From positions 5,022,001 to 5,086,000 of the forward strand of contig CATNEN010000003.1 of the NCBI GenBank assembly GCA_950097015.1: a stretch of DNA of 64,000 nucleotides, read 5' to 3'. The notes under the pieces were generated by a model. The model was not told where the DNA came from and did no database searches. It worked only from the letters and a program-made list of their open reading frames with translations. Made by a program: the position numbers and the translations under genes. Positions 21,553-49,627 of the stretch are shown in pieces. The number at the start of each line of letters is the position of its first letter. Positions within the stretch are counted from its first letter, which is position 1. This stretch comes from Macrostomum hystrix. Taxonomy: Eukaryota > Animalia > Platyhelminthes.

Positions 21553-23532
21553 TCAGCACAAAATTAGCTGGCAGCAAAGAAACGAAATGCTCATCACCTG
21601 AAGTAGTTGAACTAAGGCTGGAACTCCAGTTTTGGAAGCATTGTCTATTAAAAATATTTTACGAGATTTTGTCGGTCTACTTTCCACGGCTTTGATTTTA
21701 GATTTTCTGTCTCGCCTGATGATCTGGCTGTACGAGTTTTTGATGCTGCAGCTCCTTCTGTTCTTGTCAGCTGAGTCCGGGAAGCTCAACAAGGACAGCA
21801 TCGGAGCATCGCAGTCGTTGAACTCAATAGGCGCCTCGGTGAGCCAATCTCGCATTGTCACATTGGCACAATTGCCATTTAATCGGTTTACATCCCGTCT
21901 GTGAAAATGTTTGCAAATATTATGACAATAAAAGCATCATTTTTAGGAGGTGATCGTGGCAGAGCGGTTTAACGCCTCTTGCGCCAAGGTCCCTGAGCTC
22001 GATTCCGATTCCACGGAACGAAGGCTTGGAGGGAAATTTAACCCCTCGATAAAGCAGTGAAAAGTTAAACTGCCCGACAATGAAAAATTCAAGTTCGGAG
22101 CTGCATGAGTCTGTGCTCAGGAGACAAAGTATTGGGCAGAATTGCGTCCTGGCTGGCTGCGGGTTCTAGTGTCACCAAATCCTGCAATTATAAATATTAT
22201 ATTTCATCTGTACATGTGCCCTAACTTTCTCATCGTGGGGATCGTACAAGGACTAGTAATTAGCAGAAAAACAATCCGGAAAAGGTCCCTAATTATGTGT
22301 ACAGAATTAAAAAAATGCTCACGTCATTTCGCTTGAATCGTCAACAGGGCTTAATTGGCAACGGCCTTCGCCGTTCCTGACGATGGTAAGTACTGTAGCC
22401 TCTTTTTCACTGAAGAACAGGCCAAGTCGTATTGGCTGGGTCGATGTTGAACTATTCGCTGTTTTATCTGTCAAATCTAGTATTTGGGATTTAATAGATA
22501 TGACTCTTATGCTCGGAATGCATCGTGTTGAACCCCCTGTCATCAATGACCTCTGACCCAGTGGACTCACACGTAGCGAAGAATTCTTTCATCTCAGCGA
22601 TGCTGCCGAAGCTGGCGAGTTGGGCGTCTCCGCCAAGGCTTTCCATGGCCTCTGTTGCAGTTTGCTTAGTGCTGCTAACCAAGTAGCACCTGCCGCGCCA
22701 GCTGAACAGGCCAGTGCCGCAGTTGCCAGGCAAGGGTACCAACAGTCTCAGACTAAATAGACTGTTCGAATGAGTTCGCGGGTCCCAGACGCTCTGCACT
22801 GTCAGTTTCCTGATGGAATAGTGGCATTCCGATTTGGTTCATTTATAATACGGATTAAACTTCGAGAGCAGCCGAGTAACCAAAGATACAAAGATAGTGA
22901 TGCTCCCGCATAGGGGGCGCCCCCCCCTAGAGGCGCCCCCCTAGAGGCGCCCCACCCCCTAGACAAAAATCCTGGCTACGCCACTGAAGCTGTTGACCCG
23001 ATCGTTCCATTGAAACAAAGAAGTAACTCTGGGGCCTACTCATAAAATGTTGTATAACTCACCTGCTATCGATTTGATAGACGTGAAGCAATCCTGAAGT
23101 GACGTCCACCTCAGCGGTGTCGCTCCAACGGAAAGTCAGGCCAGCCCTATTCTGATAGTTAGTTATGGTCGATTTGTCAGTAGGCCCGGAGACAGCTTGC
23201 AGAACCACTTGCCGACTGAAAGCGCTGAAGCCCTGATCAAAGCTGATATCCCACTTGCATCGCCTCAATTCGGTGTTTTCCGGCACTTCATGAAATATCG
23301 GATTTAGTTGAGCGTCGAAAAGTACAATGGGTTGGTCGTGCTGTACTTCCAGATCTTGTTCACGAATGATGCAATAGTGATGTCTTGATTCACACCTGAA
23401 ATTGGTCAATGTTGCTGTTGAGATTAACTCTATTTTGCAGTAAATTGGTAATGTTAGACGATATGTGACTTACCTTTGAGTCAATATACACAACGCGAAC
23501 AGGGCAGTCAAGGGTAGGCCTAACTGCTTCAT
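21553..23532 (-). CDS. Paralogue A: CUB-like + C-type-lectin-like surface protein, GPI-signal-like C-terminus (~376 aa)
   Basis: Exons 23532-23474 (signal peptide MKQLGLPLTALFALCILTQ), 23395-23063, 22809-22571, 22476-22323, 21898-21553. 1131 nt, in phase, GT-AG. Homologous to paralogues B-D. Confidence 0.72.
21947..22200 (+). mobile_element. SINE family 1, degenerate copy in last intron of paralogue A
   Basis: A-box GTGGCAGAGCGG, B-box-like GCTCGATTCC, and GCTGCGGGTTCTAGTGTCAC shared with the 33.5 kb copy. Confidence 0.65.
22911..22986. mobile_element. Fragment (one end) of a hAT MITE
   Basis: GGCGCCCCCC repeats ending in CCTGGCTACGCCACTG, similar to the CAGTGGCG TIR of the MITE at 45 kb; no matching left end or TSD. 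Confidence 0.45.
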
Positions 23533-24398
23533 TTCACAGTAGCAAAAACTATAAATGTTGAATTGTTCCGACAAGCGCAAAAGAATTTCAATATGGAAGT
23601 ATATTTTCACAGTTCGTGTGTGAATCAAAAACGCCTATGTATATAAAAACAAATGTACATTATTATGCTATCTGTGCCCTCTTAGTCGCAGGGTCTACTC
23701 AAAGTTTTGTACTCAAAAGACCTGGATTCGCCAGCAAGCTTTGCTCATATTTTCTTCGAGTGAGAAAATAAACTTGCCTTGCGCTGAAGTTCCCTTTTTA
23801 AAAGTGCGCACGCTGAGCAATCGCAAGCCGGCGTGATAACAATCTAGATGTATACCAGACAAGTGTGTAGATTTGGTGAATGACTCATTATAGCCGTTGC
23901 AAGTCGGGCCCTGTGACAATGCTATTTTTTGCCGACGCACACTAGAAAGACAATTTCGTTCTAACTCAGTGACTCTCAGGGACTGGCATGGGTGCGAGGG
24001 TCGGCCAAGCGACAGATACGCCTCACACCTCAATTGAAAACTTTTTTCTACCTTTTGGAAAGGTATTTTGAATCTCCAGTTAGGCATTGTATTTTTTAGC
24101 GTTAATACAAACAAACAAATATTGAAAAAATAAGTCAACAGCATGTAACATAATAATAGCACAATGAATAGCATAGCGTTAAAGCATAACTTCTGCGCTC
24201 GACATTTATATGCAATAGATAGTTTCCAATGAGTAGTTTTTGTGTGGTTTCACTAGCCAGTTGGCCAGGTATTTGGCCTAATTACAACTAAAAAATCTTT
24301 TTAATTTTGAATTTCAAGGCGATGCGTCATCAGTTTCATCCGATTCCAATTGAATGTCAGGCGATGCTTCGGGCGGTCTTTGATACAAAATTGAATAG

Positions 24399-27300
24399 TC
24401 AGCATCCTGAATCTCCTGGTGGTAAACTGTAGTAAACATCTGGCTCCAATCCGGCCCCTGAACTAGCATCAGCGAAATCATCAGTTTGAGCTTCAGGGGT
24501 TGATTCGGTCAGAGTCTGAGCTGAGTGTCCTGGTGTGGTTTGATTAGCAGACAATGTCGAATTTCCAGCTTTGCTAGCAGTTGATTCGGTCGGAGTTAAA
24601 GCAGTTTCATTATGCGTCATTTCTACGCCTGGTTCGCTTGGATTATAGCCGAATGGAATATCATTGTTGGGATAATCATTCAAACAAGTGTGATAATTAT
24701 CCGCATCAAAAAGTGCTCTAATTTTAGCCGCGTCTTCGCTTGATTCTGTTGGACTTTCAGGTGGAGTAGCGGTGTCCTTATTGGAAGTGGTCGACGAACT
24801 AGACGTCTTGCCATCCTCCCCAACAATAACTGATCCAGTGGGAGCAGTCCCTGAACAACCAACTGCATCCCTTTTATTGTCAAATTCACTTCTTTGTTCG
24901 TCTATGGTCTGATGGAATAATTCTGCAGAAGTTCGTCCAACAGTGTTCACATCCTCAACTGTTTTTTCAGGTTGTATTTCGACTAGTGCTCCAGTTTCCA
25001 CTGCTGGACTGAGCAATGCTTTGTTACTGTTTGATTCTTTGTCTTCTTTTTGGAAACTATTCTCATATTTTGAAGAGCGCTTATTAAGACCAAAGCAAGG
25101 CCATTTTAGTTTGAACGTCCAAACTCCTGTCAGCGTGAGTAAAACTAGGATCCCGAATATGGCCGCTAGGATGGCGAGTCCGCTGACAACAGGATGCAAC
25201 TGTCCAGATCTTGCAGCTGCAGGGGTAGTAGATAGGCCGTATGAAATATTAATGGGGCTTCCAATTAGAAAACTGCCCCAACTGCGGTTGAAGAGGCTGT
25301 CCAATGAACCAATGCCGCATGCGTCAACAAGCGAAGATGAAGTGGCGTTTTCAGAAAACTTAATAAGAGTCAGCATTGAACTACGGCAGTCGTGAAACTC
25401 TAGGACCATCGTGTCAGATTCGCTAGCTGCCAGTGAACCGCACGGACCTGACACGACTTCGTCTGACAGCCTGAAGTTGTTGCAGAGTCACTGAGCTTCA
25501 TGCATTTGTATGCAATTCCTAAAGTAAGGATAAGGTGTTACAGGACTTACTTAAATGCATCCAGTCTGGAAACTGGTTTCAGCGCGCATGTACCGCTGTC
25601 ATTCCTGACCAATGACAACACCGTGGCATCGGCTGGTCTGTGGAACAGACCTACACGCACTGGCTGGCTCAAACTTAGCGGCCGTCTATAGGGATGCATG
25701 AGCAGCTTGTGAGCGTCTGAAAACGATCGAGCATCAGATTTAAAACCAAGCAGCCCTATTGACTTGCAGCTCAGTGGATGTACCAGCTGTAAAATGGGTA
25801 CCACCATCAGATGGGTAATTAAGGTTTTGTGGCACCTTCCTGGGTCCTCAAACACAGTACTTTTGTCTCAGAACTAGCTATTATTAACATTGGAAAGACA
25901 CGGGGGATATTTCAAGTACCTCCCCCTGCTCCCAAACCGAATGACCAATTTTCGTGAAATATTCCTCCATTTGAATCTAAACTTTCCACCCTTCACGATC
26001 AACCAACTTTCAAAGCCGCCCGACGTCAGATCGTCGAGATATTCAGCGATTTTCGTCGGAGACCCAGGCAACAATGAATGAGACGAGATTCTCTCATTCT
26101 CTCGAGGTCTTACAACTCTTAAATCAGGGGTCAGCAAACTCCGGCCCGCGGGCCAGATGCGGCCCTCGAAGCTCCCAAATCCAGCCCGTTGCCCCTTCTA
26201 ACATCTGCAGTGTCCTGTTTCATCTCTCCCGTGTCTAATCTATCCCGTGTCTAATCTCTCCCGTGTCTAATCTCTCCCGTGTCTAATCTATCCCGTGTCT
26301 AATCTCTCCCGTGTCTAATCTCTCCCGTGTCTCATCTCTCCCGTGTCTCATCTCTCCCGTGGATCATCTCTCCCGTGGATCATCTCTCCCGTGTCTCATC
26401 TCTCCCGTGTCTCATCTCTCCTGTGTCTCATCTCTCCCGTGGATCATCTCTCCCGTGTCTCATCTCTCCCGTGTCTCATCTCTCCCGTGGATCATCTCTC
26501 CCGTGTCTCATCTCTCCCGTGTCTCATCTCTCCCGTGGATCATCTCTCCCGTGGATCATCTCTCGCGTGTCTCATCTCTCCCGTGTCTAATCTATCCCGT
26601 GTCTAATCTCTCCCGTGTCTAATCTCTCCCGTGTCTAATCTCTCCCGTGTCTAATCTCTCCCGTGTCTAATCTCTCCCGTGTCTAATCTCTCCCGTGTCT
26701 AATCTCTCCCGTGTCTAGTCTCTCCCGTGTCTAATCTCTCCCGTGTCTAGTCTCTCCCGTGTCCCATCTTTCCTGTGTCTCATCTCTCCCGTGTTTCATC
26801 TCTCCCCTATCTCATATTTATACAGTCAATGCGGCCCCCTGTTGTCTTTTAGGTTCTCTCTTTGGCCGGCCAGCAAATAAGTTTGTCTACCCCTGTCTTA
26901 AATAAAAGATGTGACTCTTAGATTTCTCCCAGATAAGATTTGTAAGTGATAAAAAGATGCACCATACAACTCACTAGCCTTCACGAAGCTGTTGATTTCA
27001 GCCTGGCTGCCGAAGCTAGCGACCTCTGCATAGCCTCCGAGGCTCGCGATGGCTGCATCGAGGCTTTGAGGCACTTGGCTAATAGCGTAGCAGCTCCCAT
27101 TGTGGCTGAGCATGTTGGTGTCGCACAGTCCGGGAAGCACCAGTAGTATTCTGAGCTGGACCTGGCTAACGCTCTGAGTTCGGGGATCCCAGTTGGCTTC
27201 AACGGTCAGTGGCAGACTAAAATATTTGTTTGTCATTCAGTACCGTTGATGAAATATTCAGCTGGCTTCAAAATTATCACTTCAGCTGACAAATTATCCC

Positions 27301-29044
27301 ACCCTGGTAAATTGTCTCCCGAGCTGACAAATTATCCTACCCTGGTAAATTGTCTCTCGAGCTGACAAATTACCCCCTATTAGATTGTCTCCCGAGCTGA
27401 CAAATTACCCCCTATTAGATTGTCACCCGAGCTGATAAATTACTCCCTATTAGATTGTCACCCGAGCTGACAAATTACCCCCTATTAGATTGTCTCTCGA
27501 GCTGACAAATTACCCCAGCTATTAGATTTTCTCCTGAGCTGACAAATTACCCCCTATTAGATTGTCTCCCGAGCTGACAAATAACCCCCCTATTAGACTG
27601 TCTCCCGAGCTGACAAATTACCCCCCTATTAGATTGTCTCCCTAGCTGACAAATTACCCCCTATTAGATTGTCTCCCGAGCTGACAAATTACCCCCCTAT
27701 TAGACTGTCTCCCGAGCTGACAAATTACCCCCCTATTAGATTGTCTCCCGAGCTGACAAATTATCCCACCCTAGCAAATTGTCTCTTTTGTATGAACTTA
27801 CATTTCCCTTAGCGGTTGTACAATAAAGATTCCCGGAGTGATGGCTATGCTCTTCTTTCCTTTGTAGCTAAGAACTGGATAAGTTAGATTGCTCGTGTCG
27901 TTTCTCGACCAAAATCCTTCCCCTCCAGGAGTGGGTTTAGTTGGCATTCCTAGCACAACTAGCTGGAGATCTTTTCTGGTGGAGCTTCTCATGCCAACTG
28001 TCCACTTGCAGCTCTTGTAGCCCAGCCTGCTCTCTACACGCTCGTCTAAGACAGCCGGGATAATAAACTCCTCCCTGTTGTTGAACTCGTCTAACTGTAC
28101 GGCTGTCGTTAATCCGTTCGTGCAGTAGTTATTGGCAGCCTGACACCTGCAGCGTTTAATGGTGTATTTTTAGTCTCCATGCAATGCTACTATAAGTAGA
28201 ACACTGCAAATAATGATAATAATTGCAGGAGGGCTGCAACAAGCACATCACACTATAGACCCGTAGCCAGCGAGGAGACAGTTCTTGCCCAATTTCGTTG
28301 ACACACGCACACACACACCGTACGCAGGCACACGCTCACACAGGTGTGTACATCTTCCCTGACTTTCTCATCTTCAGGCAGTGTACACTCTCACTGTGCC
28401 TTGGAGGTTGGTCCTCAAAGGTGTCAATTGCACGACAAGCCCCCAAGCCTTCTCTCCGCGGCTGTGCCCCAAATGAATGTGGCCTCGCCGCGGAATCGAG
28501 CTCAGGGACCTTGGCGCAATAGGCAAAAACGCGTTAACTGCTCTGCCACTCACCCGCTTAATCATGATAATTTTTATATCGCAAACCTGTATTAATAGCC
28601 TACTCATCTCTGATTGGTTGAATCTTGAACGTGATGTACACACAGTTCATAAATTTGTATAAAAAAACTGTCGTTTTATCAATCTCCTCAGCAAATTGTT
28701 TTTTTATATCGTGGAATTTTTATTCCACGTCTCTAGAGTCTTACGTCCTGCTTAATCCATGTTGAGCTGTAACTAACTGCAAGTCTATCTTGGCTTTTAG
28801 ATTTAGTTGTTTAAAACACGCAGTCGATAAATGAATGACTAAATCATTTCTAGTGAAGCCTCGCACAAAAAATAGTAGGTTATTGATTTTCGAAATGCCA
28901 AACTCACTCTGTATGCGACAGTACCACAGTCAGAAATAATATGAACGCGTCGATTACAAGTGCGTCCTGAAATGCAGAAATATATATTACTTGCAATGGA
29001 TAATAACAATAATGAACAACATTCATTACTGATCAACTTACCAT
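24399..29044 (-). CDS. Paralogue B: type I membrane protein, CUB-like + CTLD-like + TM + cytoplasmic tail (~628 aa)
   Basis: Exons 29044-29042 (ATG|GTAAGT), 28966-28908, 28146-27802, 27216-26975, 25716-25551, 25470-24399; 1887 nt. Signal MDALVIDAFILFLTVVLSHTE; TM VVSGLAILAAIFGILVLLTLTGVWTF. Confidence 0.82.
26125..26895 (+). mobile_element. hAT MITE copy 2 with ~0.6 kb internal 16-bp array
   Basis: TIRs CAGGGGTCAGCAAACT/AGTTTGTCTACCCCTG; TSD TCTTAAAT at 26117-26124 and 26896-26903. Confidence 0.92.
27283..27785. repeat. ~35-bp minisatellite (GAGCTGACAAATTACCCCCTATTAGATTGTCTCCC) filling an intron of paralogue B
   Basis: About 14 copies between exons 3 and 4. Confidence 0.92.
28205..28558 (-). 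mobile_element. SINE family 1, near full length
   Basis: Reverse complement begins GGGTGAGTGGCAGAGCAGTTAACGCG (A-box), then GCTCGATTCC (B-box); body matches the other copies. Confidence 0.78.
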
Positions 29045-31045: not shown

Positions 31046-31578
31046 CAGGGTCGGCAAACTTATTAGCTAGCGGGCCAAAAAGAGAACCTAAAAGACGACA
31101 GCGGGCCGCGCAGACTGTAGAAATCTAAGAGAAATATATCAGAGATAGGGGAGAGATGAGTAACAGGAGAGATGAGAGAGAGAAGAGATAAGACACGAGA
31201 GAGATGAGACAAAGGAGAGATAAGGTACGGGAGAGACGAGACGATGGCGAGATGAGACACTGGATAGATGAGACACGGGATAGACGAGATACGGGAGAGA
31301 TGAGACACGGGAGAGGTGACACACGGGAGAGATGAGGCAGGGGAAAAGGCGACACACGGGAGAGATGAGGCAGGGGGAAAGGCGACACACGGGAGAGATG
31401 AGGCAGGGGGAAAGGCGACACACGGGAGAGATGAGGCAGGGGGAAAGGCGACACACGGGAGAGATGAGGCAGGGGAAAGATGAAACTGTATACAATAGGT
31501 GTCGGAAGGGGCAACGGGCCGGATTTGGGAGCTTCGAGGGCCGCATCTGGCCCGCGGGCCGGAGTTTGCCGACCCCTG
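31046..31578 (-). mobile_element. hAT MITE copy 3 (inverted) with short internal array
   Basis: TIRs CAGGGTCGGCAAACT/AGTTTGCCGACCCCTG; TSD CTCTAAGT at 31038-31045 and 31579-31586; internal unit has become a ~33-bp dimer. Confidence 0.92.
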
Positions 31579-32469: not shown

Positions 32470-35400
32470 CTATTTAGGCAGGAATCCTATTTTTGAGTCA
32501 TCCTGTTCAAAATGTTCTTCGCCAAGTTCTTCAGCTTGCATCAGCTGACATGTTTGGAAATCATCATTGCCTAAACTTGAAAATGTTGGCATCAATTGAC
32601 TGCCCTGCTCCTGGGATGGATCAGCGATGCTGCTGTCCTTCTGATCTTGTTTCCGAATCGCTGCAGCCGCTGGCAAGTTTCTAGGTACATTCATTGCGCA
32701 AGTTTGAAATTCTTCTTCTGGAGCGAAGCTCTCCGGTTGATTTTCGAGCGATGCCTCCGGGATGTTCGAAAGATTTGAAGCACGAAACATACGCTCAAAC
32801 TCTTCGGGTGTCAAAACGTCTTCTGAAGGTGTATCGGCAAACATTGTAGGAGGACCGAGAGTGCTAGGAGGCTGTTCAAAATATAAAGATGGTGATATGA
32901 GAGGATGTGAGTCGGGAGCATTCGAAACAGCCGAATTTCCTTGCTCTACTCTGTGCGAAGGACTTTCTCGTTGTGCAAACGATTGAATCGGTCGAATCCC
33001 CACTAACTGAATATTTTCCGGTTGTTGTATTTGGCCAGCAGGAGCACGTCCTGGAGGTCGCGACGTTTCACCATTTTCATCGGTTCCGGTGCGACAAGGA
33101 AGTTGTCTTCTTTTGAGAAGGACGATGATTAATATGACAATGCCGAGCGCAACAACAAGAGGGATAACAACTCTTACAATCACTGCCACATTTTTAGACG
33201 ACTCATTTTCCTGTTTATCATGAACCGTATCGGTCCTGTTTAGTGGTCCATCAGTTACTGTTGCAGGACTGACCGGAGGTGCATCCTTTCGTTGAAGGAA
33301 CTCGTCAACAATCTTCGGGATGTTGCAGTCCTTGAAGGCTAACTCTTTGCTTCGGTTGTTAGGTGTCTCTGGAAACATTATAAATGAAAACTTCTCGCTA
33401 TTGCAGGTGTCCAGCTCGAATGTCACGCGGTTCGAAGTGTCGACTTTCATAACAGCGCAACGACCTGTTGACGATTCCACAGGTAATCTGAAATTTTGGG
33501 GGTCGGTGGCAGAGCGGTTAACGCGTTTGCCTCTCGCACCAATTTCCCTGAGCTCGATTCCGCGACAACGCCACATTTATTTTCATTTTCAAGCCGAGAG
33601 AAGGCTTGGGGGCTTGTCTTGCAATTTACGCCCTTGAGGGCCAACCTCCAAGACACAGTGAAATGTGCAAGTACAATGTTTGACGATGAGGAAAGTCAGA
33701 ACAGATGTACACACCTGTGTGAGCGTGTGCCTGCGCACAGTATATGTGTGTGTGTGTGCTCAGGAGTCAGCGAAATCGGCAGAATTGCCTTCTCGCTGGC
33801 TGCGGGTCTAGTGTCACGGTAAACGATGTACCATTGCCCGCAGCCTTCCTGCAATTATTACTAAAGTTTATTATTATTATTACGAGTAGATTCTTTTTTA
33901 AGCTGAAATGTTTGTTACCACACAACAGCTGGTCAAGAAATAAACAAATAAATATTTATTAATTTGCTTCAGACTTACCTTAAGTCACGTGCAGTCGCAA
34001 TCGGTTGGAGACTGCAGGAGACGCTTTCAGTATTTGTCACGGAGTACAATGCCTCTGCGCCCTGATAGTAGAACATGCCCAATCGCACTGACTCATTAAA
34101 GATCAGAGGTTGCCTGTAGGGATGCCTAAACACTCTCTCTTTGTCTGAAATTTCAAATATTAATAATGATTCACAGAAATTCCTATTTGGGTTATAAAAT
34201 CGAATAAATTTTTTTTTTTATTAAAAAAATATTTGTTCGGTTTGCAACAAATTTATCTAAGAAATATTCGCTCTAACCAAAGAGCTTCCTGAATTCTTTT
34301 CCCGATATTGGCCAGCTAAGGCTTGCGTGCTAAACATTTTTCTGGAGAGCACAAGCCTGGTCAGGACCCACTCCACAAATAATGAACGAGGCGACCAAAG
34401 GTGGCGACCAAAAATTCAAGGTGGCGCCCCTCACCCTCTACCCAAGCAAAGGTGGCGCCCCTCCCCAGCAAAGGTGGCGCCCCTCCCCCAAGCAAAGGTG
34501 GCGCCCCTCCCCCAAGCAAAGGTGGCGCCCCTCCCCAGCAAAGGTGGCGCCCCTCCCCAAGCAAAGGTGGCGCCCCTCCCCAGCAAAGGTGGCGTCCCTC
34601 CCCAGCAAAGGTGGCGCCCCTCCCCCAAGCAAAGGTGGCGCCCCTCCCCCAAGCAAAGGTGGTGCCCCAACCCAGCAAAGGTGGCCCCCCTTTCCCCAAA
34701 ATCCAAAATGGCACTGCCAGAAATCCAAGGTGGCGCTTATGAAATACTTCAGGCTTTGTATCTGCAGGAGATGTCGGAGAATCATTTTTAAGAAACAGTA
34801 AAACAAATATTTAGAAATGCACATCAGCTCACTGGCGTCAGTGAAGTTGCGCAGCTCTATCGAGCTACTAAAGCTGGCCAGTCGGGCATCACCGCCCAGG
34901 CGTGCCATGGCTGTGGTGAGATTTACGCGACTGTCGCTCCGAGCGTAGCAGCTGCCCTTGAAGTCGAGCATACTGGCGTCGCATAGTCCAGGAAGGACCA
35001 CAAGGATTCTGAGCTGGACTCGGCTAGGTGTTTGAGTTCGCGATTCCCAGCTGGCTTCAACGGTGAGCGGAAACCTGGTTATGACCGCATTGTGTTTTTA
35101 AAACTGTAGAAATTCCACTGCCCGAATTTCGAAAACACTCATTTTTATTTTCTATGTAGCTCCCAAAATATTCAATCGATAAGAATCCTAAACATGGGAC
35201 GTTTTACCTCGTTTCAGCCATCTGCAGCCTATCAATATTGTAGTTAGCCTACGCATGTTAAAACGAGGTTGAAACGACAGCCCGCCGTTGCTGTTGAGGT
35301 GTGTCTACTGTTAACTAATCACCAATTGGCTTTTAAAATGCGAGCGAGAAAAATGTTCTCACATTCGTTCTATGCTGGCGACATAGAAGGTTCCTGGCTG

Positions 35401-38400
35401 CACTCTGAACTTTTCCCCACTGAAACTGACAATCAAGTCTGCAGGTGTCTTCAGATCATCCTTGGACAGTGATGGACTATCAACATTAGCTTTTTTAACT
35501 GGCACTCCCAGTAGGACGACTTGATGATTTGTTAATGAACTCTCAACTGTCCATCTGCAGCTCTTGAAGGTCTGGAGGCCGTCATCGATGTAGTCTAGTG
35601 GGGTGGGAACTATCATTTCGTCCCTGTTATACTTGTCATCCATTTTGATTGGCATTGTCAAGCCGAACCTGCAATATTGATTTGAAGCTCGACAGCCTCG
35701 GCAGCTGAAATCAAACAAATAAGTAATTATTAACACGAATAAAACATTTCTTTATCAACTAAGGTAGAATTGAGACAGGGTAGAATTGAGACGGGGTAGA
35801 ATTGAGACGGGGTAAGAATTAAGATGGGGTAGAATTGAGACAGGGTAGAATTGAGACATGGTAGAATTGAGACGGGGTAGAATTGAGACAGGGTAGAATT
35901 GAGACGGGGTAAGAATTGAGACGGGATAGAATTGAGACGGGGTAGAATTGAGACGGGGTAAGAATTGAGACGGGGTAGAATTGAGACGGGGTAAGAATAA
36001 AGACGGTTAAGAATTCAGACGGGGTAAGAATTAAGACAGGGTAGAATTGAGACGGGGTAGAATTGAGACAGGGTAGAATTGAGACGGGGTAGAATTGAGG
36101 CGGGGTAAGAATTAAGATGGGGTAGAATTGAGACAGGGTAGAATTGAGACATGGTAGAATTGAGACGGGGTAGAATTGAGACAGGGTAGAATTGAGACGG
36201 GGTAAGAATTGAGACGGGATAGAATTGAGACGGGGTAGAATTGAGACGGGGTAAGAATTGAGACGGGGTAGAATTGAGACGGGGTAAGAATAAAGACGGT
36301 TAAGAATTCAGACGGGGTAAGAATTGAGACGGGGTAGAATTGAGACGGGGTAGAATTGAGACAGGGTAAGAATTGAGACGGGATAGAATTGAGACGGGGT
36401 AGAATTGAGACAGGGTAGAATTGAGATAGGGTAGAATTGAGACGGGGTAAGAATTGAGACGGGATAGAATTGAGACGGGGTAGAATTGAGACAGGGTAGA
36501 ATTGAGACGGGGTAAGAATTGAGACGGGGTAGAATTGTGACGGGGTAGAATTGAGACGGGGTAGAATTGAGACGGCATAGAATTGAGACAGGCTAGAATT
36601 GAGACGGGGTAGAATTGAGACGGGATGGAATTGAGACGGGGTAAGAATTCAGACGGGGTAAGAATTGAGACGGGGTAGAATTGAGACAGGGTAGAATTGA
36701 GACGGGGTAGAATTGAGATAGGGTAGAATTGAGACGGGGTAGAATTGAGACGGGATAGAATTGAGACGGGGTAAGAATTGAGACGGGGTAGAATTGAGAC
36801 GGGATAGAATTGAGACGGGGTAGAATTGAGACGGGGTAGAATTGAGACGGGGTAAGAATTGAGACGGCGTAGAATTGAGACGGGGTAGAATTGAGACAGG
36901 GTAGAATTGAGACGGGATATAATTGAGACGGGGTAGAATTGAGACGGGGTAGAATTGAGACGGGATAGAATTGAGACAGTGTAGAATTGAGACGGGGTAA
37001 GAATTGAGACGGGGTAAGAATTAAGACGGTTAAGAATTGAGACGGGGTAGAATTGAGATGGGGTAGAATTTAGACGGGGTAGAATTGAGACGGGGTAGAA
37101 TTGAGACGGGATAGAATTGAGACGGGGTAAGAATTGAGACGGGGGAAGAATTGAGACGGGTAGAATTGAGACGGGGTATAATTGAGACGGGGTAGAATTG
37201 AGACAGGGTAGAATTGAGACGGGGTATAATTGAGACGGGGTAGAATTGAGACGGGGTAAGAATTGAGACGGGGTAGAATTGAGACAGGGTAGAATGGAGA
37301 CGGGGTAGAATTGAGACGGGGTATAATTGAGACGGGGTAGAATTGAGACTGGGTAAGAATTGAGACGGGGTAGAATTGAGACGGGGTAAGAATTGAGACG
37401 GGGTAGAATTGAGACAGGGTAGCATGGAGACGGGGTAAAATTAAGAAAGGAGATGGGAAGGAAGATACTTCACAAAATTAAGGGAAAAATTATCGGACTG
37501 AGGGGGGAGACAATATACAGTGACGAACAATTGACAAAATAGGGAACTTACTTGATGTAAATAATCATGAGCCAGTACAGCGTGTTCCATTTGCGCCTAA
37601 CAACCTGCAAAGTATTAAATTTCAGCCATTTCGGTGCGAAATTTTGCCACACGTGTTCGTTATTACCCAGTTGTTTATCAAAAGATTTTCAGACAATCGT
37701 CACACTATCAGGTTTACCAAACAGTGAAATTAATAAAACAATAAAATAAACTACGCAGCTTGACAGTTCCAATGCAGTTTATCAATTTACCAGTTTATCC
37801 CCTGTCTCAATTCTCCCCTGTCTCAGTTCTCCACTGTCTCAGTTCTCCCCTGTCTCAGTTCTCCCCTGTCTCAGTTCTCCCCTGTCTCAGTTCTCCCCTG
37901 TCTCAGTTCTCCCCTGTTTCAGTTCCCCCCTGTCTCAGTTCTCCCCTGTCTCAGTTCTCCCCTGTCTCAGTTCTCCCCTGTCTCAGTTCTCCCCTGTCTC
38001 AATTCTCCCCTGTCTCAATTCTCCCCTGTTTCAGTTCTCCCCTGTCTCAGTTCTCCCCTGTCTCAGTTCTCCCCTGTCTCAATTCTCCCCTGTCTCAATT
38101 CTCCCCTGTCTCAATTCTCCCCTGTCTCAGTTCTCCCCTGTCTCAGTTCTCCCCTGTCTCAGTTCTCCCCTGTCTCAATTCTCCCCTGTCTCAATTCTCC
38201 CCTGTCTCAATTCTCCCCTGTTTCAGTTCCCCCCTGTCTCAGTTCTCCCCTGTCTCAGTTCTCCCCTGTCTCAGTTCTCCCCTGTCTCAGTTCTCCCCTG
38301 TCTCAATTCTCCCCTGTCTCAATTCTCCCCTGTTTCAGTTCTCCCCTGTCTCAGTTCTCCCCTGTCTCAGTTCTCCCCTGTCTCAATTCTCCCCTGTCTC

Positions 38401-40440: not shown

Positions 40441-40989
40441 ATCGAAATCGAAGCCTTTAGTAAAAAATAGACAAATTGCTATAAGGTTTCTGCTTCTGCT
40501 GTTTAGAACAATGGCATAAGACAGCTAGCTCATTTGCGCAGCGATTTAGCAAGCGGAAATTTATATTTCATGGTTTTTTCTAAGACTTCTCGCAAAAGCT
40601 AGCGTACTGGTAGGAGAGACTTGATGAAACTTATGTACAGTCTTTCAAGCCGAGAGAGAGAGAGAAAGAGAAACATAGAGACAGGGAGAGCCAGGCAGAC
40701 AGAAAGTAGACCAGGAATCAGCTCTATATGTACATCAGAAAGAAGGGTTGAGGCATTTAATAATGGAGTTTTGTTACATTGGCTGTTTGACTCATTGGCT
40801 GCTTTATGCTCATTGAAATGAGCATTAATGTACACTCGAATTTGTGCGCAGTAGCTCTAGCAAAAACAGCTGTCTGTGAGTATGGATGAATGTGAGTGCG
40901 CATGTCCTATTAGTATAATGTGTTTTTCATAGATGTTCACTGCCATTTAGCACCGACTTGAAGCGTCCCTGTTTTGTTCAGATCGGTTC

Positions 40990-41220
40990 AGATCGGTTTA
41001 CCGCGTTTGCCTCTCGCACCAAGGTCCCTGAGCTCGATTCCACTGCGAGGCCGCATTCATTTGTGGCGCAGCCGCGGAGAGAAGGCTTGGGGACTTTTCG
41101 TTCAATTCGCGCCCTTATGGGCCAGCCTCCAAGCCACAGGGAGAGTGTACACTGCCTGACGATGAGAAAGTCAGGCCAGATGTACACACCCTGTGTGCGT
41201 GTGTGCTCGGGAATCAGCGG
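40990..41220 (+). mobile_element. SINE family 1, partial
   Basis: CGCGTTTGCCTCTCGCACCAAGGTCCCTGAGCTCGATTCC...GAGAGTGTACACTGCCTGACGATGAGAAAGTCAG. Confidence 0.72.
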
Positions 41221-42061: not shown

Positions 42062-42817
42062 TGGGCAGTTGACAGCGTGGTGGTGAGGCAGTTGACAGCG
42101 TGGTGGTGAGGCAGTTGACAGCGTGGTGGTGAGGCAGTTGACAGCGTGGTGGTGAGGCAGTTGACAGCGTGGTGGTGAGGCAGTTGACAGCGTGGTGGTG
42201 AGGCAGTTGACAGCGTGGTGGTGAGGCAGTTGACAGCGTGATGGTGAGGCAGTTGACAGCGTAATGGTGAGGCAGTTGACAGCGTGGTGGTGAGGCAGTT
42301 GACAGCGTGGTGGTGAGGCAGTTGACAGCGTGGTGGTGAGGCAGTTGACAGCGTGGTGGTGAGGCAGTTGACAGCGTGGTGGTGAGGCAGTTGACAGCGT
42401 GGTGGTGAGGCAGTTGACAGCGTGGTGGTGAGGCAGTTGACAGCGTGGTGGTGAGGCAGTTGACAGCGTGATGGTGAGGCAGTTGACAGCGTAATGGTGA
42501 GGCAGTTGACAGCGTGGTGGTGAGGCAGTTGACAGCGTGGTGGTGAGGCAGTTGACAGCGTGGTGGTGAGGCAGTTGACAGCGTGGTGGTGAGGCAGTTG
42601 ACAGCGTGGTGGTGAGGCAGTTGACAGCGTGGTGGTAGTGAGGCAGTTGACAGCGTGGTGGTGAGGCAGTTGACAGCCTGGTGGTGAGGCAGTTGACAGC
42701 GTGGTGGTGAAGCAGTTGACAGCGTGGTGGTGAGGCAGTTGACAGCGTGGTGGTGAGGCAGTTGACAGCGTGATGGTGAGGCAGTTGACAGTGTGGTGGT
42801 GAGGCAGTTGACAGCGT
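42062..42817. repeat. 23-bp minisatellite (GGCAGTTGACAGCGTGGTGGTGA)
   Basis: About 33 copies, intergenic. Confidence 0.95.
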
Positions 42818-43563
42818 ATGTACGCTCGTAGAATATTTTTGGAATATAATACAACTAGTAGCAACCGATTTAACCAGAAAATCATATCTTACGAGCTAAA
42901 ACAAACCTAGCAAGAATTTGAATACAGTTTCATTTTTGTGATATCAGGAAGCAATATATTATTAAAAACAATTTTGGCGGATTCGAATGTCCTTTGAGAG
43001 GCCTATTACAATATAGACAACATTTTTAAGTCTCAAAGCAAAATTGCTGCAATGAGCTACTGCAGCAAAGAAAACGTAGGTAATCCCAGTTGTTACATGC
43101 ACTATAACACGATTTTGAGGTAATAAAGCATGTTTTGAACGACAAAGTTCTGCAACAAATTAGCTTTTGGCTAATTATAAGCGACGCGCGGAGCGTTTGA
43201 TAGATTGAATTGGTAAGTATTGGTAGGTAGGTTTTGGTAGATTAAATTCTTTTTGTCTATGGACAAAATAGATCGTGGCAGGCAATCGTGGTTAAAATAT
43301 ACTTCTGCAAGCATTTGTGGCCAAGAAATACACAACCATAATTTTTTTGGCTAAGTTTATCTCGGGTTAAGAAAGCACTAATCAAAGATACCATGCGACA
43401 GTTCACAAGAGCAAGTCAAGCGAAAATACAAAAACTCTGGTTGGAATAAACTAATTTAAAAGAAGCAGATTTATCTAACAGTTTATTATACCGGAAAGAC
43501 TTCAGTATTTCTGTCTGAATAAATAAAAAACATAATAGTCGATAGTAAAAATCCAGACTACAA

Positions 43564-46500
43564 CTAAAATTCGTTCATCCTTAGGATTGAATCCAGACTT
43601 GCTGAGCGATCAAGCGATGAATTAGTCTCTGCCTTGACTCCAAGTGCTCCTGCTTCAACAAATTGTAAGTTGGCAAACAGAGTTGAATCAAGACTTGCCG
43701 ATTCACAGAAAGGCGAGTTGGCACCCAAAATGGATCCCAGACTCCACACTGACTCACGCTGCGAGTCAGTTGTTCTCGAATCATATTGCCCTAACAAAGG
43801 TTGCACTTGACGATAAGTTTCAGGAGAATCCGTTCGCATTTCAGTCTGACAAGCTGAGACACCAGTGATAATGGTTCTTTTTATTTCAACGATGAAAACA
43901 ATTAAAAGCGCTACCAATAGTAGAATTATAGCCGAACCAAGAACTGCTGCCAAAATAATGGCATATTCCAGGCTGCTTGCGGAAGGAACTTGCCGTTGAG
44001 AGTCATTGAGTGACGAATTCCGAAACGCAAACTCTGTTAGTTTCTGCAGCATGTCTCTAACACGATTATTGTTGCACTGCTGGGAATAGCTCAATATTCT
44101 TGCATTATTTTCAAATCTGATAAGTGATTTCATTTTTATGCCACATTCACCGAACTCGACAACAGCTGTGTCAGAGATGAGTGCAGTGAGATGAGCACAA
44201 GCGCCAGCCGATGCACCAGAAGCCCTGGAAAGTGTGCGTCCATCAAATCAAAGCAAAGAAAGAAAGAAAAATATAGAGAATATTATTTTTTTGACGGGAC
44301 TAATGAATTCTTACGGAAATTCCTCCGGTCTCTGAACATTCTGCAGCCCGCACGCACCGCTATCATTTCTGATCAAGGACAGGACGGCGGCATCAGCGTT
44401 GCTGTGGAACAGACCTAGGCGCAAGGGCTGGCTCAAAGCTAGCGGCCGTCTGTAGGGGAACACGGACTTTCTGGCCACGTCTGCAATCAGTGAAAACTTT
44501 CTGTGAAACTTTTCGCTGTTATGCAACTTGTCATAATATCATAGTCCTTAACTTGTCCTGACACTTTTGCCTCACATGTTGTTTAATTACTTAAAGAAAT
44601 AGGTAGTCTCCACTTAAAAATTGAAAGAATTCCACTAAGAATCTAATGTTCGTCAACAGTACAAAGAGTACGTTATTCTTAACCTATGGGGAGAGACCAT
44701 GCACGGGGGTGTTTCAAATGACCCTTGACCGATGACCGATGACCGATTTACGGGAAAGTCCACCATATGAATCAAAATTTTCTGTGCTTTACGACGAACT
44801 AACTTTTAAAGTATTCCGACGTCAGCATCGTCCTGATAATCAGCGATTCTTGTCAAAGACCAGTGTGACAAGGAACTAACATTGCTCTGTATTACCTCTA
44901 TGGCGAATCCATATTGGTTCAATAGTTTAATAATCATATAGACAGTGTATAGACAATCCGATATAGTCAACTACAAGTGTATTATAGCCGACATAGTTGC
45001 AAGAAGACAGTGGCGGCGCAGGACCTCCAGCTGGGGGGGGCAGTGGTTGGGTGGTCACCCCCCCGGCCACCAAAAAAAAGGTCTTAGGTGACCACCCTCA
45101 TGCCCCATGGGGTGACCACACTTTTGAAAAAATATGGTAACGTACCAATTTTTTTTAAGTGGGTGGTCACCCCCTGAGGGTGGTCACCCGGGGGCAGCCC
45201 GCCCCCCCCGCCCCCCCTTCGCCGCCACTGCAAGAAGAAAATATTCCTTTATTAGTAGTTTTAGCTAAAAGACAACCCGACTAGAATTGTTGAATATCTC
45301 GACGATGCCGATGCTTAGTGATTCTGGATGTTGTTTCATCGGATAGAGCGGAAAATTAGGCCGTGTTCTGGATTTTCACGGCAATTGGTTGAACGTTTTG
45401 GAGATACAGAAAAAAAAGAAAAAAATGTGGGTAGTTATTTACCCCATGGTATCTCTATTGTTAAATAAATGTATAATCTTTCCCACTTATTTCGGCTGCC
45501 AGGGTGTAAAGGCTCGAGGCGCAAATTTATTGACCGAGGCGAAGCCGAGGTCAATGAAATTCGCGCCGAGTGCCTTTGCACCCTAGACAGCCGAAATAAG
45601 TGGGAGAGATGGTATGTATCCCCCACTTGGCTGCCGACTTTCATTGCACTTTAAGTCTTCTGTTTCTTGCTACGCTCTGTCTGTAGTCTATGGTGAAAAT
45701 CAAAATCCGAGAGGAGGGTAGACGCTAAAAAAGACAGCCTTTATGCGAAAAAGACAGAACAGGACAGAATAGCAGACGCTTGTATATGTCTAGCCCTCGA
45801 TTTGAAAGCTTGAATGAGGCCGAGGCGGAGGCCATGATTGGCGGCACGGTCCCTCCGAACACCGTAAAGAAATGCGAGTGGATGCTGTCTACTTTCAATG
45901 AATGGCACGCGTTTAAGAAGCAAGAATGGGCGACGAATGGTGGACCATCCATCATGGTTATCAAGGACATGGATGAGTTTGACAAGACGGACCTGAACTT
46001 TCTCCTGAAGTTGTTTATCCTGGAGGTCCGGACAAAACGGAACGAACGGTACTCGGCTGGTACCCTGAAGGACTTCTTCTCAATGCTACAATACCAAATG
46101 CGCAACGTGCATCGCAAGGACTGGTGCCTCTGGACGAATGTCGAGTTTGCCGAGTGCAGAAGAGCGTTGGACGCTGCTATGAAGCTATCAACTGCTGAGG
46201 GCAAGGGCGTCGGGCTCAAGAAGTCTGACCCGGTGTCAAAGCCCATCGAAGATGACTGCTGGACGGAGGGTGTGTTTGGTTCCGAGCGTTCTCGTTTTGC
46301 ACTTTCTTTGTTTATTTCCCCAGACGGGTGTGACTTATGTCTGTGGTAAAAGTTCTGTTTCGCGCGGGGGCGCGGGAAATAAATGATTTATTGCCCTAGG
46401 GCAAATAAACGAAACGCGTTACGACATAGACAATGTTGGCGGGCAAGTGGGGGATACATGCACACATTATCGGACATCCTTGTCAGGGTCAAGGACAACT

Positions 46501-49500
46501 TAATAACTCAGGACCGGAAACGAGCCAATTCATGGCGAAAAAAGTATGAGGCTCGTTTAAAAGCATTGTTCTATGGCCCATCCGTATGCGCATGCTTTCA
46601 GTTGCGAATGTATACTCGTATCATATTTGACTTTTTAATAGGCAGTCAGAAGGCGGGTGCAGGGTCGGTTTTCTTAAATGTTGAATAGTTTTATTACATA
46701 AAAAACGTCGGGAAAATACACAATGGGAAAGCTGCACATGCAGCACATGTATAAGGAAACTCGAGAAAAATTTACGATTCTTTCTTCATCTGAACTGCAA
46801 ACAGAGAGGAAAATAACAGTCACATAACGGGACAAGAGCTGACTATGATTAATAGTAAAGTGTTTGCTCCAGGTTCGCTCACTGTCCACTCAGCTTCAGT
46901 ATTTTTCTATCGTGCGCTTTATCAGGCGAAGGAGCGCTCTTTGTTCCTCGTTGAACATAACCCTTGAAGAAACAGTTGGTGAGGCGCACGCAGCATCCCA
47001 GAACATCTGCTTCAGGGAAGTAAAACTCGCCAACGGCAGCAAACAATTTCCGCACTCGCAAAGCACATGACGGTGATCGCAGCGAAATGAAGCATCCGAA
47101 ACAGAGGCAAGCAAAATTGAACAGCCACTTTGGCGGGTGCTTCAACTTTCCCCGGGAAATCATTTCAGTGAATTCACAGAGTGAGGTGTTTAAATTATCG
47201 GCAGGATCTTCACCGGCAATTTTCTCCTTAAACGTTATGTAGCCTGAAATGTTATTATTATGCCTCAGTTTTCACCTCAGCAATCGTTATTTCCATCCAA
47301 GTTTAAGTAACACAAATGCATGCCTGACCTGCAATATAATAAACAGATGCCTTTTCGGCCATTGATAGGCTCTCTGCTTTGACATAGCAGTCATCGAGCG
47401 TCGAAAGTTCTTCGTCTGAAAGGGGCGTGTCGCAGCTCGCGTCTCGAAATTCTACTAGTTCATCTTGGAAAAGGCATCGTTCGGACAACAGCACGCCTCT
47501 TCCCTCAGCCTGTCGACTGGCACGCACTGCAATATCCAAGCGCGCATCTTAGTGGTTCGTTTCGACCCTATTTGATGCAGTACAAATACGCTCGAATATT
47601 TGAATTAAAGCAGTAGAACTTCACAAACCTTGTGTTTGAACGAGGCAAGACTGCGGGACTCCGTCGAAAACTGATGGTGGATGTAGCGGCCTTTCATTTC
47701 TTCCCTTTTTTATCATTGGGGCATCTTGAGGCCAGTGCTTAGCACACACGCCCATGTAGTCTGTCACGGTCTAAACAACAACAAAATTGTTAATGAATTC
47801 ATGTGGCCAGGCTAAATCTGATTAGCAAAGCACATTTGAAGAAAGTCTTACCGTCAGTTGATTAGGCAGAGACAGTCGCCAAGCCTCTCGTTCAGTTGCA
47901 TGTTTAGGAAACGAAAATACTGTAACATTCCGATCACGGTTACTATTGTAGTTTGAACAACAGAAAATAACGCTGCATTTTCTCGGCATGATATTTAGTT
48001 TCAGCTAGCAAGAATAAAAGTTCTCTCTCTCAATTGCAAGTGCATGCGAAGAACTCAATTTTCAGCTCAGATTTCTTCGCTTTCGTAGCTTTGGATGGGC
48101 CATAGAACAATGCTTTTAAACGAGCCTCATACTTTTTTCGCCATGAATTGGCTCGTTTCCGGTCCTGAGTTATTAAGTTGTCCTTGGTCAGGGTATGACT
48201 GTTGTACATGTTTTCAATTAGCAGATTCTATAGACGTCCCTTAAAGAGTGAAGAGTCTACCCATCTTTTCAAGCAATGGGGCAACGCGTGAGGCAATTTT
48301 TTTAAATAAACAAAAAGCAGTCAATGATCTAATGAGTTTTTAATTTATCTGATTATTTTAATGAAAGCAATCCATCTCTCATTATGCACAAGCGAACTCA
48401 CTGGCCTGCACGAGACCGTTTATCTCCAACTTGCTGGTGAAGCTGGCCAGTTGAGCATAGCCTCCTAACCTGTCCATGGCTGCAGTGAGGTTCTCAGATG
48501 TCTCGCTGACTGCGTAGCAACTATTGTTAAAGCTGAGCATGCTGGTGTCACAGATTCCAGGTAGCACCAGCATTACTCTGAGCTTCACCCGGCTAGCGGT
48601 CTGTTCGCTGGGGTCAAAGCTGGCTTCAGCAACCAGCGGAAGACTGCAAGAACGATAAGGACAGCTTAGTGCGAGGACAATAATGCACTTTAACAATTGA
48701 ACTGGAGATTTGATACCTACACTTCAGTGATGGGGTAGACGTGGAACATTCCCAGGATGAGTGGCACCTTGGTGCGTCCGAGCTTGATGAAGAAGTCCGC
48801 AGACCTCATCTCGGGCTGAACTATCGCGTCGCTTGGAGACGAATCAAGCGGCACAACTTGGACAACTAGCAGTTGGTTTCTGTCGAAAATGCTGCTCTCA
48901 ATGCTCCACTTGCAGTTGGTATAGGTCCCAGACGGCTCTCCAGGATTCACAATCATGACGACCTGTTCCCGGTTTATGTTCAAATCTAATTCAATCAGGT
49001 TAGTCTTTCCATCCTGGCAGTAGTGGTTGTCTGAGTAGAATGTCCGACTGAAATTGGCGCACAAGATGGTCGACAGTCGATTGCAGAAACGTACGTATTA
49101 GAATCGGTAAAAAATCTAAGAAATTGTTTATAGGGCTACTTACAAGAAAGCGGAGAGTAGGATCGCAAGGACTACAGTCGTCTGACAGGGCGCTGGAGTC
49201 TGAAAGGATTTGTATTTTTTTCTGAAACTGTTTAGTTTCCAGCATAAAGCATAGCAAGACTAGTGCGTCTGCTTTCAAAAAATGAACCAGCTGGTACAGT
49301 GAACGCACAATTCGAGGCTTGAAGCAAAGTAGAAGAGCTGAGCTTATATTCGTGCGAAACTTTTCCTTTTGAGTTTCTGAGTAGATGAAAAAGTTTTGAT
49401 TACACCTACGCCCAACAGGGCCAGATGCATGGCGATGAGCTGCATCCAAAGGCTTTTTGTTCCGCTGTTTAGTCCATGGATTTACAGAATGACGTTTTCC

Positions 49501-49627
49501 CAGAGTGACATTTCCCTGGAGTGACATTCGAGCCTGATCGTAATCTAAATCTCTAACCAATGGGCTAAAATCGGACAGGACAGTGTGGTCAGTTCTGTAA
49601 CGCTGAAACAATTAAAGGACTTACCAT
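43564..49627 (-). CDS. Paralogue D: type I membrane protein, CUB-like + CTLD-like + TM + short tail (~484 aa)
   Basis: Exons 49627-49625 (ATG|GTAAGT), 49199-49144, 49047-48721, 48643-48402, 44480-44315, 44224-43564; 1455 nt. Signal MTPAPCQTTVVLAILLSAFF; TM YAIILAAVLGSAIILLLVALLIVFIV. Confidence 0.8.
45008..45230. mobile_element. 223-bp hAT MITE (second family)
   Basis: TIRs CAGTGGCGGCG/CGCCGCCACTG; 8-bp TSD CAAGAAGA at 45000-45007 and 45231-45238; GGTCACCC subterminal motifs. Confidence 0.9.
45431..46411 (+). mobile_element. Truncated Crypton-like (tyrosine recombinase/DUF3504 family) element
   Basis: ORF 45780-46349 has NTVKKCEW..FNEW, LNFLLKLFILEVRTKRNERYSAGTL, RRALDAAMK..EGKG..KKSDPVS..EDDCWTEGVFG, as in the N-terminal half of Crypton/ZMYM/KCTD1-type proteins. 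The catalytic half is absent. Inverted ends GTTATTTACCC/GGGCAAATAAAC; boundaries approximate. Confidence 0.72.
46490..48186 (-). mobile_element. Internally deleted P-element-superfamily DNA transposon (THAP transposase remnant)
   Basis: 94-bp TIRs starting CAAGGACAAC; 8-bp TSD GTCAGGGT at 46482-46489 and 48187-48194. Spliced THAP domain from ATG 47989: MPRKCSVIFC..FSFPK..AWRL|..VCAKHW..PPSVF. C-terminal YIAG|YI and SRGKLKHP motifs present; no DDE core. Confidence 0.88.

What the first reader, a model, noticed from the sequence alone, without database searches (positions are those of the whole stretch)
21553..49627. Hidden tandem cluster of four fast-diverging CUB-like/C-type-lectin-like cell-surface receptor genes
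Seen: four - strand genes share intron phases. In B, C and D the two lectin exons are exactly 242 and 166 nt. Shared motifs are YC..CKW.I/V..QLVV, PLTVEA.WDPR, LPG.C..ML...SCY, LGG.A.LASF.S..E, HPYR.PL....P.RLGLF and C.L.P. All four splice into uninterrupted ORFs, yet the N-terminal domains and tails are very divergent. Inference: a lineage-specific receptor family evolving by birth-and-death, as expected for immune, allorecognition or gamete-recognition genes. I do not recognise it as a named family.
Basis: partly seen in the sequence, partly recalled or inferred. Interest (0 to 1): 0.85.

Follow-up and report, generated by a model that had tools for sequence, protein, structure and literature searches.

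The report
Flatworm CUB-like plus lectin-fold receptor genes
Four neighbouring genes of a Macrostomum-type flatworm, two shown to be transcribed, encode surface proteins built from a CUB-like sandwich and a very divergent C-type-lectin fold; they belong to a family of at least 37 genes known only from this genus, whose ligand and role are untested.

Summary
Four minus-strand paralogs (A-D) share exon structure and intron phases (2, 2, 1, 2). The two lectin exons are exactly 242 and 166 nt in B, C and D, and 239 and 154 nt in A. Spliced RNA contigs confirm every junction of gene A and the last junction of gene B.

The cluster is larger than four. A fifth gene lies just past the window end. At least 37 lectin-exon copies exist, 36 of them on this one contig. 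Outside this genome, family members were found only in M. lignano.

"Fast-diverging" is not shown: synonymous sites between A-D are saturated and dN/dS is below 1 in all but one comparison that could be estimated (1.01). Function is untested.

The scan already reported this family on other DNA of this genome (s1-840486, and probably s1-381990). The genome is probably M. hystrix (220 Mb, 42 contigs). Joined spliced proteins were never submitted; all searches went exon by exon.

The parts
23474..23588 (-). Gene A exon 1: 5' UTR plus signal peptide (ATG at 23532, MKQLGLPLTALFALCILTQ)
   Evidence: RNA contigs of X1-X4 join 23472/4-23587/8 to the N exon with CT..AC ends. The ORF and donor AG|GTAAGT were found.
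23063..23395 (-). Gene A N exon (333 nt): strands 1-8 of the CUB-like sandwich
   Evidence: (spliced contigs), alignment A3.
22571..22809 (-). Gene A first lectin exon (239 nt): last two sandwich strands plus the start of the lectin-like domain
   Evidence: RNA joints 22808->23062 and 22476->22571; alignment A1.
22323..22476 (-). Gene A second lectin exon (154 nt)
   Evidence: RNA joints; alignment A2.
21507..21898 (-). Gene A last exon: end of the lectin-like domain, short stalk and a hydrophobic C-terminus with no cytoplasmic tail (stop at 21553-21555). A GPI anchor or tail anchor is inferred.
   Evidence: RNA joint 21898->22323 in X2-X4; translation.
27802..28146 (-). Gene B N exon (345 nt)
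   Evidence: BLASTP to P0002 residues 1-108: 36% identity, E 5e-20.
26975..27216 (-). Gene B first lectin exon (242 nt)
25551..25716 (-). Gene B second lectin exon (166 nt)
   Evidence: RNA joint 25469->25550 appears in all four runs.
23976..25470 (-). Gene B last exon: end of the lectin-like domain, stalk, membrane span (VVSGLAILAAIFGILVLLT), 244-residue tail, stop at 24399-24401, 3' UTR
   Evidence: RNA contigs of 2224-2394 nt.
35363..35704 (-). Gene C N exon (342 nt)
34833..35074 (-). Gene C first lectin exon (242 nt)
33979..34144 (-). Gene C second lectin exon (166 nt)
32470..33487 (-). Gene C last exon, coding part: end of the lectin-like domain, membrane span, 214-residue tail
   Evidence: Acceptor TTTCAG at 33487 in the right phase. 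No RNA check.
48721..49047 (-). Gene D N exon (327 nt)
48402..48643 (-). Gene D first lectin exon (242 nt)
44315..44480 (-). Gene D second lectin exon (166 nt), 3.9 kb downstream across an intron that holds transposon remains
43564..44224 (-). Gene D last exon, coding part: end of the lectin-like domain, membrane span, 107-residue tail
   Evidence: Acceptor TTCCAG at 44224. No RNA check.

Best explanation
A-D, with a fifth gene just past the window end, are old tandem duplicates. They belong to a family of surface proteins seen so far only in Macrostomum.

Each protein has, in order:
- a signal peptide (identified only for A);
- a ten-strand, CUB-like beta-sandwich;
- a compact, non-canonical C-type lectin-like domain;
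- a short stalk;
- a single membrane span with a divergent, low-complexity tail (B, C, D, E), or only a hydrophobic C-terminus (A, inferred GPI or tail anchor).

The lectin-like domain keeps the N-terminal hairpin disulfide and the C2-C3 pair. It has lost the C1-C4 pair and the calcium/sugar motifs.

Inferred mechanism: the ectodomain binds a protein or glycan ligand without calcium, as NK-receptor-type lectin-like domains do. The variable tails would couple binding to uptake or signalling. Tail-less A could act as a co-receptor or decoy.

My best guess for the role is somatic recognition of microbes, the environment or self. This is inference only.

Shown: genes, splicing of A and B, lectin-like fold, family distribution. 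Inferred: membrane topology, ligand binding, role.
For: Exon structure and phases.

RNA: spliced contigs identical to the reference in four runs of one study.

Fold:
- AlphaFold model of M. lignano P0002: pLDDT 79.6, pTM 0.79. P0002 is 54-56% identical to B-D in the first lectin exon and 63-69% to B and D in the second (35% to C).
- Foldseek against PDB: 122 hits at E <= 1e-3; the 50 listed are C-type lectin-like domains, best langerin at 5.5e-5.

Sequence link to lectins: the first-lectin-exon profile reaches canonical lectin-domain proteins in a library of 1.84 billion (P0024 at 2.6e-5, P0025 at 4.3e-5; P0025 has Pfam Lectin_C at 1.6e-28).

Motifs and topology: no EPN/QPD motif in A-D; six conserved ectodomain cysteines; membrane spans in B, C and D.

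Distribution:
- 37 lectin-exon matches in the genome, 36 on contig C3.
- All 16 library family members looked up are from M. lignano.
- B, C and D form a supported clade; other subfamilies are shared with M. lignano.

Selection: dN/dS is 0.22-0.55 in all but one comparison that could be estimated (1.01 for A-C over 49 codons).
Against: - Pfam finds neither Lectin_C nor CUB in any exon or any whole family member.
- The fold was modelled on a relative, not on a window gene.
- The first exons of B-D were not found, so their signal peptides are assumed.
- C and D have no RNA check.
- Nothing here bears on ligand, tissue or role.
- Tail motifs are sparse: one YxxL in B and one YxxV in D.
Confidence: 0.7

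Rival explanations
1. The family serves reproduction: sperm, egg or partner-tissue recognition in a hermaphrodite that inseminates hypodermically. Sexual selection or conflict would drive its divergence.
For: Reproduction-related genes in Macrostomum turn over quickly and are hard to place in orthogroups (PMC10468722). The N domain diverges about twice as fast as the first lectin exon (dN 0.64-1.18 against 0.31-0.58). Spermadhesins are CUB proteins (1spp is among the weak N-domain matches).
Against: No tissue information was obtained. dN/dS is below 1 in all but one comparison that could be estimated (1.01). A and B are present in all four RNA runs, whose sample types are coded.
Confidence: 0.12
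2. These are structural adhesion or matrix-contact proteins of epidermis or gut, not signalling receptors. The tails would be spacers without signalling function.
For: The tails are unalignable and low in complexity, and carry few docking motifs. Gene A has no tail at all. CUB and lectin-like modules are common in matrix and adhesion proteins (my knowledge).
Against: A family of 37 or more diversified paralogs is unusual for purely structural proteins. Long tails are kept open in B, C and D.
Confidence: 0.13
3. Some or all of A-D are decaying duplicates with no function, transcribed only as background.
For: Gene D carries a 3.9-kb intron full of transposon remains. One run shows a gene A isoform that stops straight after the second lectin exon. 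C and D have no RNA check.
Against: All four frames are open over 356-607 codons, although synonymous sites are saturated. The cysteine framework is conserved. Splicing of A and B is correct in four runs.
Confidence: 0.05

Closest known systems
NK-receptor-type C-type lectin-like domains (CLEC5A, CLEC-2, KLRG1, NKp80, Dectin-1) of the vertebrate NK gene complex
   Different: They are type II membrane proteins with the lectin-like domain at the C-terminus, no CUB-like domain and the canonical C1-C4 disulfide. Here the topology is type I, with an N-terminal sandwich, and C1-C4 is lost. Rows within 1 Z unit are ties, so calcium-binding lectins (scavenger receptor lectin, Mincle) match about as well.
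Invertebrate proteins that combine lectin-like and CUB domains, such as many Caenorhabditis elegans clec genes (my knowledge)
   Same: They combine the same two module types in large, clustered, lineage-specific gene families, which are often linked to immunity.
   Different: Those proteins are mostly secreted and are recognised by the Pfam Lectin_C and CUB models. This family is membrane-anchored, and Pfam detects neither domain in it.
Type I membrane proteins with a single lectin-like domain (layilin, CD302, chondrolectin)
   Same: Signal peptide, extracellular lectin-like domain, one membrane span and a cytoplasmic tail.
   Different: They are conserved single-copy vertebrate genes with canonical cysteines and no CUB-like domain.
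Other CUB-like/lectin-like arrays reported by this scan in the same genome (s1-840486, s1-381990)
   Same: For s1-840486, the same family by my own search: its place matches my hits at C3 4.02-4.09 Mb. For s1-381990, the same architecture by its title.
   Different: They are different loci. s1-381990 lies on another contig, where my profile found only one weak hit, so it may be a more distant subfamily. Its sequence was not compared here.

Membership tests
C-type lectin-like domain superfamily (fold) | Double-loop alpha/beta fold with two helices and two sheets that superposes on solved lectin-like domains | tested here: met
C-type lectin-like domain superfamily (fold) | Significant sequence or profile link to canonical lectin-like domains | tested here: inconclusive
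   The family profile reaches canonical lectin-domain proteins at E 2.6e-5 to 5e-4 in 1.84 billion proteins. Pfam Lectin_C hits no family member. PDB profile hits are only E 0.011-0.1.
C-type lectin-like domain superfamily (fold) | Conserved disulfides C1-C4 and C2-C3, plus C0-C0' in long forms | tested here: not met
   The C0-C0' pair (C x10 C-Y) and a C2-C3-like pair (C x17-18 C) are present. The helix-1 cysteine C1 is replaced (AAM/AAI..L) and no C4 sits in the last strand. An extra pair, one cysteine in the second lectin exon and one after the domain, is conserved. Pairing is inferred, not seen.
Calcium-dependent carbohydrate-binding C-type lectins | EPN or QPD motif together with WND at calcium site 2 | tested here: not met
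   A-D contain no EPN, QPD or related motif. Only gene A has FND next to the cysteine.
CUB domain | Match to the Pfam CUB profile or to genuine CUB domains by profile comparison | tested here: not met
   Pfam gives no hit at E <= 10 or on whole proteins. PF00431 finds 110 exons in this genome, none at a family locus. hhalign against nine CUB domains of this genome gives probability 2.5%, aligning only the C-x-W motif.
CUB domain | Beta-sandwich of about 110 residues and ten strands that superposes on solved CUB domains | tested here: inconclusive
CUB domain | Four conserved cysteines forming two disulfides | tested here: not met
   Only two cysteines are invariant in the window genes' N exons (Y-C and C-x-W).
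Type I single-pass membrane protein | N-terminal signal peptide and one membrane span after the ectodomain | tested here: inconclusive
   Hydropathy shows membrane spans in B, C, D and E. A signal peptide is shown only for A. M. lignano relatives have one. Gene A ends in a hydrophobic segment with no tail.

The most novel reading that the evidence does not exclude
The roughly 4.4-Mb stretch of contig C3 that holds nearly all members could be a dedicated recognition-gene complex of Macrostomum. Tail-less (A) and long-tailed (B-D) members would work as paired or decoy receptors in self/non-self or partner recognition, in a convergent analogue of the vertebrate NK gene complex.
Probability: 0.08. 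Interest if true: 0.7.

Novelty: new variant of a known kind. Interest (0 to 1): 0.35.

Why it matters
It adds an undescribed receptor-like family, seen only in one genus, to a flatworm group used as a model for regeneration and sexual selection. It also shows a lectin-like fold so divergent that standard domain annotation misses it, which matters for counting immune-type receptors in flatworms. Lineage-specific expansions of lectin-like receptor genes are common in invertebrates, so the result is useful rather than surprising. The scan had already met this family elsewhere in this genome.

Tried and rejected
- Pfam on single exons, on more distant paralogs and on whole M. lignano proteins gave nothing.
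- A word-based homolog search with the gene C tail exon gave no hit.
- An apparently intron-less copy (L025/L026, 181-residue open frame) was dropped as a fold target. The extra 40 or so codons begin like a GT donor, so they are probably an intron that happens to stay in frame.
- The N exon folded alone gave a poor model and no Foldseek match. The sandwich needs two more strands from the next exon.
- hhalign of the N domain against this genome's CUB domains was not significant.
- UniRef names ('CUB domain-containing') were rejected as evidence. Sibling entries carry unrelated names such as BRCT, PAZ, Tub and exostosin.
- The first exons of B, C and D were not found by scanning for signal peptide plus donor.
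- Pairwise dN/dS among A-D is unreliable because synonymous sites are saturated.
- No paper mentions the M. lignano members or a family of this kind.

Full report
**What is in the window.** Stop-to-stop fragments of the minus strand, compared all against all, show four sets of related exons. Splice sites were read from the sequence.

Each gene has these exons:
- An N exon of 327-345 nt.
- A first lectin exon of 242 nt in B, C and D, and 239 nt in A.
- A second lectin exon of 166 nt in B, C and D, and 154 nt in A.
- A long last exon.

Intron phases are 2, 2, 1, 2 in all four genes, and every intron is GT..AG. No junction codon is a stop. The frames stay open for 356 (A), 607 (B), 588 (C) and 464 (D) codons from the N exon to the stop.

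**Expression.** Four public runs from one study hold about 60% of the sampled words of 21500-26100.

- Their contigs are identical to the reference and are spliced.
- For gene A they join 23472-23588, 23062-23393, 22571-22808, 22323-22476 and 21507-21898.
- This corrected my first guesses for A's two lectin exons.
- For gene B, contigs of 2.2-2.4 kb join 25550-25716 to 23976-25469. They carry another 728 nt or so upstream. That length fits the first lectin exon, the N exon and about 141 nt of exon 1.
- One run also shows a gene A variant that joins the second lectin exon to 22131-22180. It reads a stop after two codons.

**Which organism.** The genome has 220,453,370 bases in 42 contigs. The published Macrostomum hystrix assembly is about 220 Mb in 42 contigs (PMC10468722). 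All 16 family members looked up in the protein library are M. lignano entries, and the closest is only about 55% identical to B-D in the first lectin exon. So the window is most likely M. hystrix. This is an inference.

**The lectin-like domain.**
- Pfam finds nothing in any exon or in any whole M. lignano relative.
- A profile of the four first lectin exons, run against 1.84 billion representatives, found 31 proteins. About 23 are family members. Three are canonical lectin-domain proteins at E 2.6e-5 to 5e-4 (P0024, P0025, P0031). P0025 carries Pfam Lectin_C at 1.6e-28.
- I could not submit joined exons. I therefore folded the closest library protein, P0002 (346 aa, a complete ectodomain), with an alignment of library proteins and unjoined exon translations (A6).
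- The model is confident: pLDDT 79.6 and pTM 0.79, with most blocks of residues 1-290 above 80.
- Foldseek gives 122 PDB hits at E <= 1e-3. The 50 listed are all C-type lectin-like domains.
- Gene B maps onto this model exon by exon. The domain starts in the middle of the first lectin exon, at LPG-C. It ends about 40 residues into the last exon, at ...FPE.

**How the domain departs from canonical lectins.**
- A-D have no EPN or QPD motif.
- The helix-1 cysteine (C1) is replaced.
- The hairpin pair and a C2-C3-like pair remain.
- A further conserved pair may tie down the C-terminus. One cysteine lies in the second lectin exon and the other after the domain. This pairing is inferred.

**The N-terminal domain.**
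- In the P0002 model, residues 4-138 form ten strands. The last two strands come from the start of the first lectin exon (PLTVEAxWDPR, LRxLxxLPG). The N exon is therefore an incomplete domain.
- Folded alone, it gave pLDDT 70.5 and no Foldseek match.
- Language-model neighbours of P0002 residues 1-140 are CUB clusters at 0.91. This is a lead only.
- Against the CUB label: Pfam CUB does not hit the family, although it finds 110 exons elsewhere in this genome. hhalign against nine of those gives probability 2.5%. Only two cysteines are invariant in the window genes' N exons.
- The UniRef name 'CUB domain-containing protein' cannot be trusted. Sibling entries are named BRCT, PAZ, Tub and so on.
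- 'CUB-like' is plausible but unproven.

**The rest of the protein.**
- B, C and D have a strong membrane span, followed by 244, 214 and 107 residues of tail that cannot be aligned.
- A ends in a hydrophobic segment preceded by small residues. This suggests a GPI anchor (inferred).
- Only A's signal peptide is established. M. lignano relatives have one.

**Family size and history.**
- A broader profile finds 37 first-lectin-exon matches in the genome. 36 are on contig C3, at 0.66-0.68, 1.11-1.18, 1.38-1.45, 2.07, 4.02-4.09 and 5.04-5.09 Mb. These counts are lower bounds.
- A fifth gene, E, lies 65-2200 nt past the window end. Its two lectin exons and last exon were found. It has a membrane span and a short tail.
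- In a tree of this short region (71 columns, weakly resolved), B, C and D form a supported clade (97/83). Several other subfamilies pair this genome's copies with M. lignano proteins. Some groups are recent local expansions.
- Between A-D, synonymous sites are saturated (pS 0.41-0.83). dN/dS is 0.22-0.55 in all but one comparison that could be estimated; the exception is 1.01 for A-C in the second lectin exon (49 codons).
- The N exon has about twice the dN of the first lectin exon.
- The window genes are therefore old duplicates, apparently under purifying selection, and 'fast-diverging' is not shown.
- In the 1.42-1.45 Mb cluster, L009 and L011 are identical in the first lectin exon and nearly so in the N exon (pN 0.004). 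Their second lectin exons differ at 36% of non-synonymous sites. That points to exchange of segments between paralogs.

**Relation to earlier scan notes.**
- s1-840486 describes the same family at the 4.0-Mb cluster and estimates about 60 genes. My search confirms that locus but counts 37 with my profile.
- s1-381990 reports a similar array on another contig, which my profile barely reaches. I did not compare its sequence.
- These are unchecked AI notes and do not count as independent support.

**Verdict.** This is a real, expressed receptor-like family seen only in this genus. It has a firmly supported, highly divergent lectin-like fold and a probable CUB-like sandwich. Its function is unknown. 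It is an ordinary kind of invertebrate gene-family expansion in an undescribed form.

Noticed in passing
window 44481-48401: The long intron of gene D holds transposon remains: a THAP-domain fragment (47825-47989, minus strand, E 2.2e-5) and a QRICH1-type ORF (45780-46346, plus strand, E 1.1e-5, below the Pfam cut-off).
   Followed up: partly
window 17394-21125, 26216-26815, 31149-31483: The same 16-bp minisatellite (TCTCATCTCTCCCGTG; 233, 37 and 21 copies, the third array in reverse orientation) appears three times. Each array lies next to a conserved stretch that translates as GSANSGPRARCGPRSSQI(R/Q)PVAPS, which suggests a mobile element that carries a minisatellite. One array sits inside an intron of gene B.
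   Followed up: no
window 35763-37446 and 37798-40361: Two further long 16-bp arrays lie upstream of gene C's N exon. Their translations are related across opposite strands. They may lie in gene C's first intron.
   Followed up: no
window 28377-28646, 33296-33819, 40962-41156: A short dispersed repeat (up to 74% identity in translation) occurs near or inside the genes. The second copy abuts the acceptor of gene C's last exon.
   Followed up: no
window 57335-64000: A Gypsy-type retroelement: reverse transcriptase and RNase H (59413-62007, E 2.8e-35) and a Gag-like ORF with a weak zinc-knuckle match (62301-63398, just under the Pfam cut-off).
   Followed up: partly
window 10376-11584: An ankyrin-repeat gene on the plus strand (Pfam Ank_2, E 3.5e-23), upstream of the cluster.
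   Followed up: partly
window 22131-22181: An alternative exon joined to gene A's second lectin exon in one run. It gives a stop after two codons and a truncated lectin-like domain.
   Followed up: partly
L009 and L011 (G000:C3:1.42-1.43 Mb): These recent paralogs are identical in the first lectin exon and nearly so in the N exon, but differ strongly in the second lectin exon (pN 0.365). This is a mosaic that suggests gene conversion or exon exchange.
   Followed up: partly
L045:1065-2223 (G000:C3:5086065-5087223): A fifth family gene (E) just past the window end, with both lectin exons, a membrane span and a short tail. Its N exon was not found within 8 kb.
   Followed up: partly
library proteins P0003-P0040: UniRef names of M. 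lignano family members are mutually inconsistent (CUB, ZP, BRCT, PAZ, Tub, exostosin, ricin B lectin). They should not be used as annotation.
   Followed up: yes
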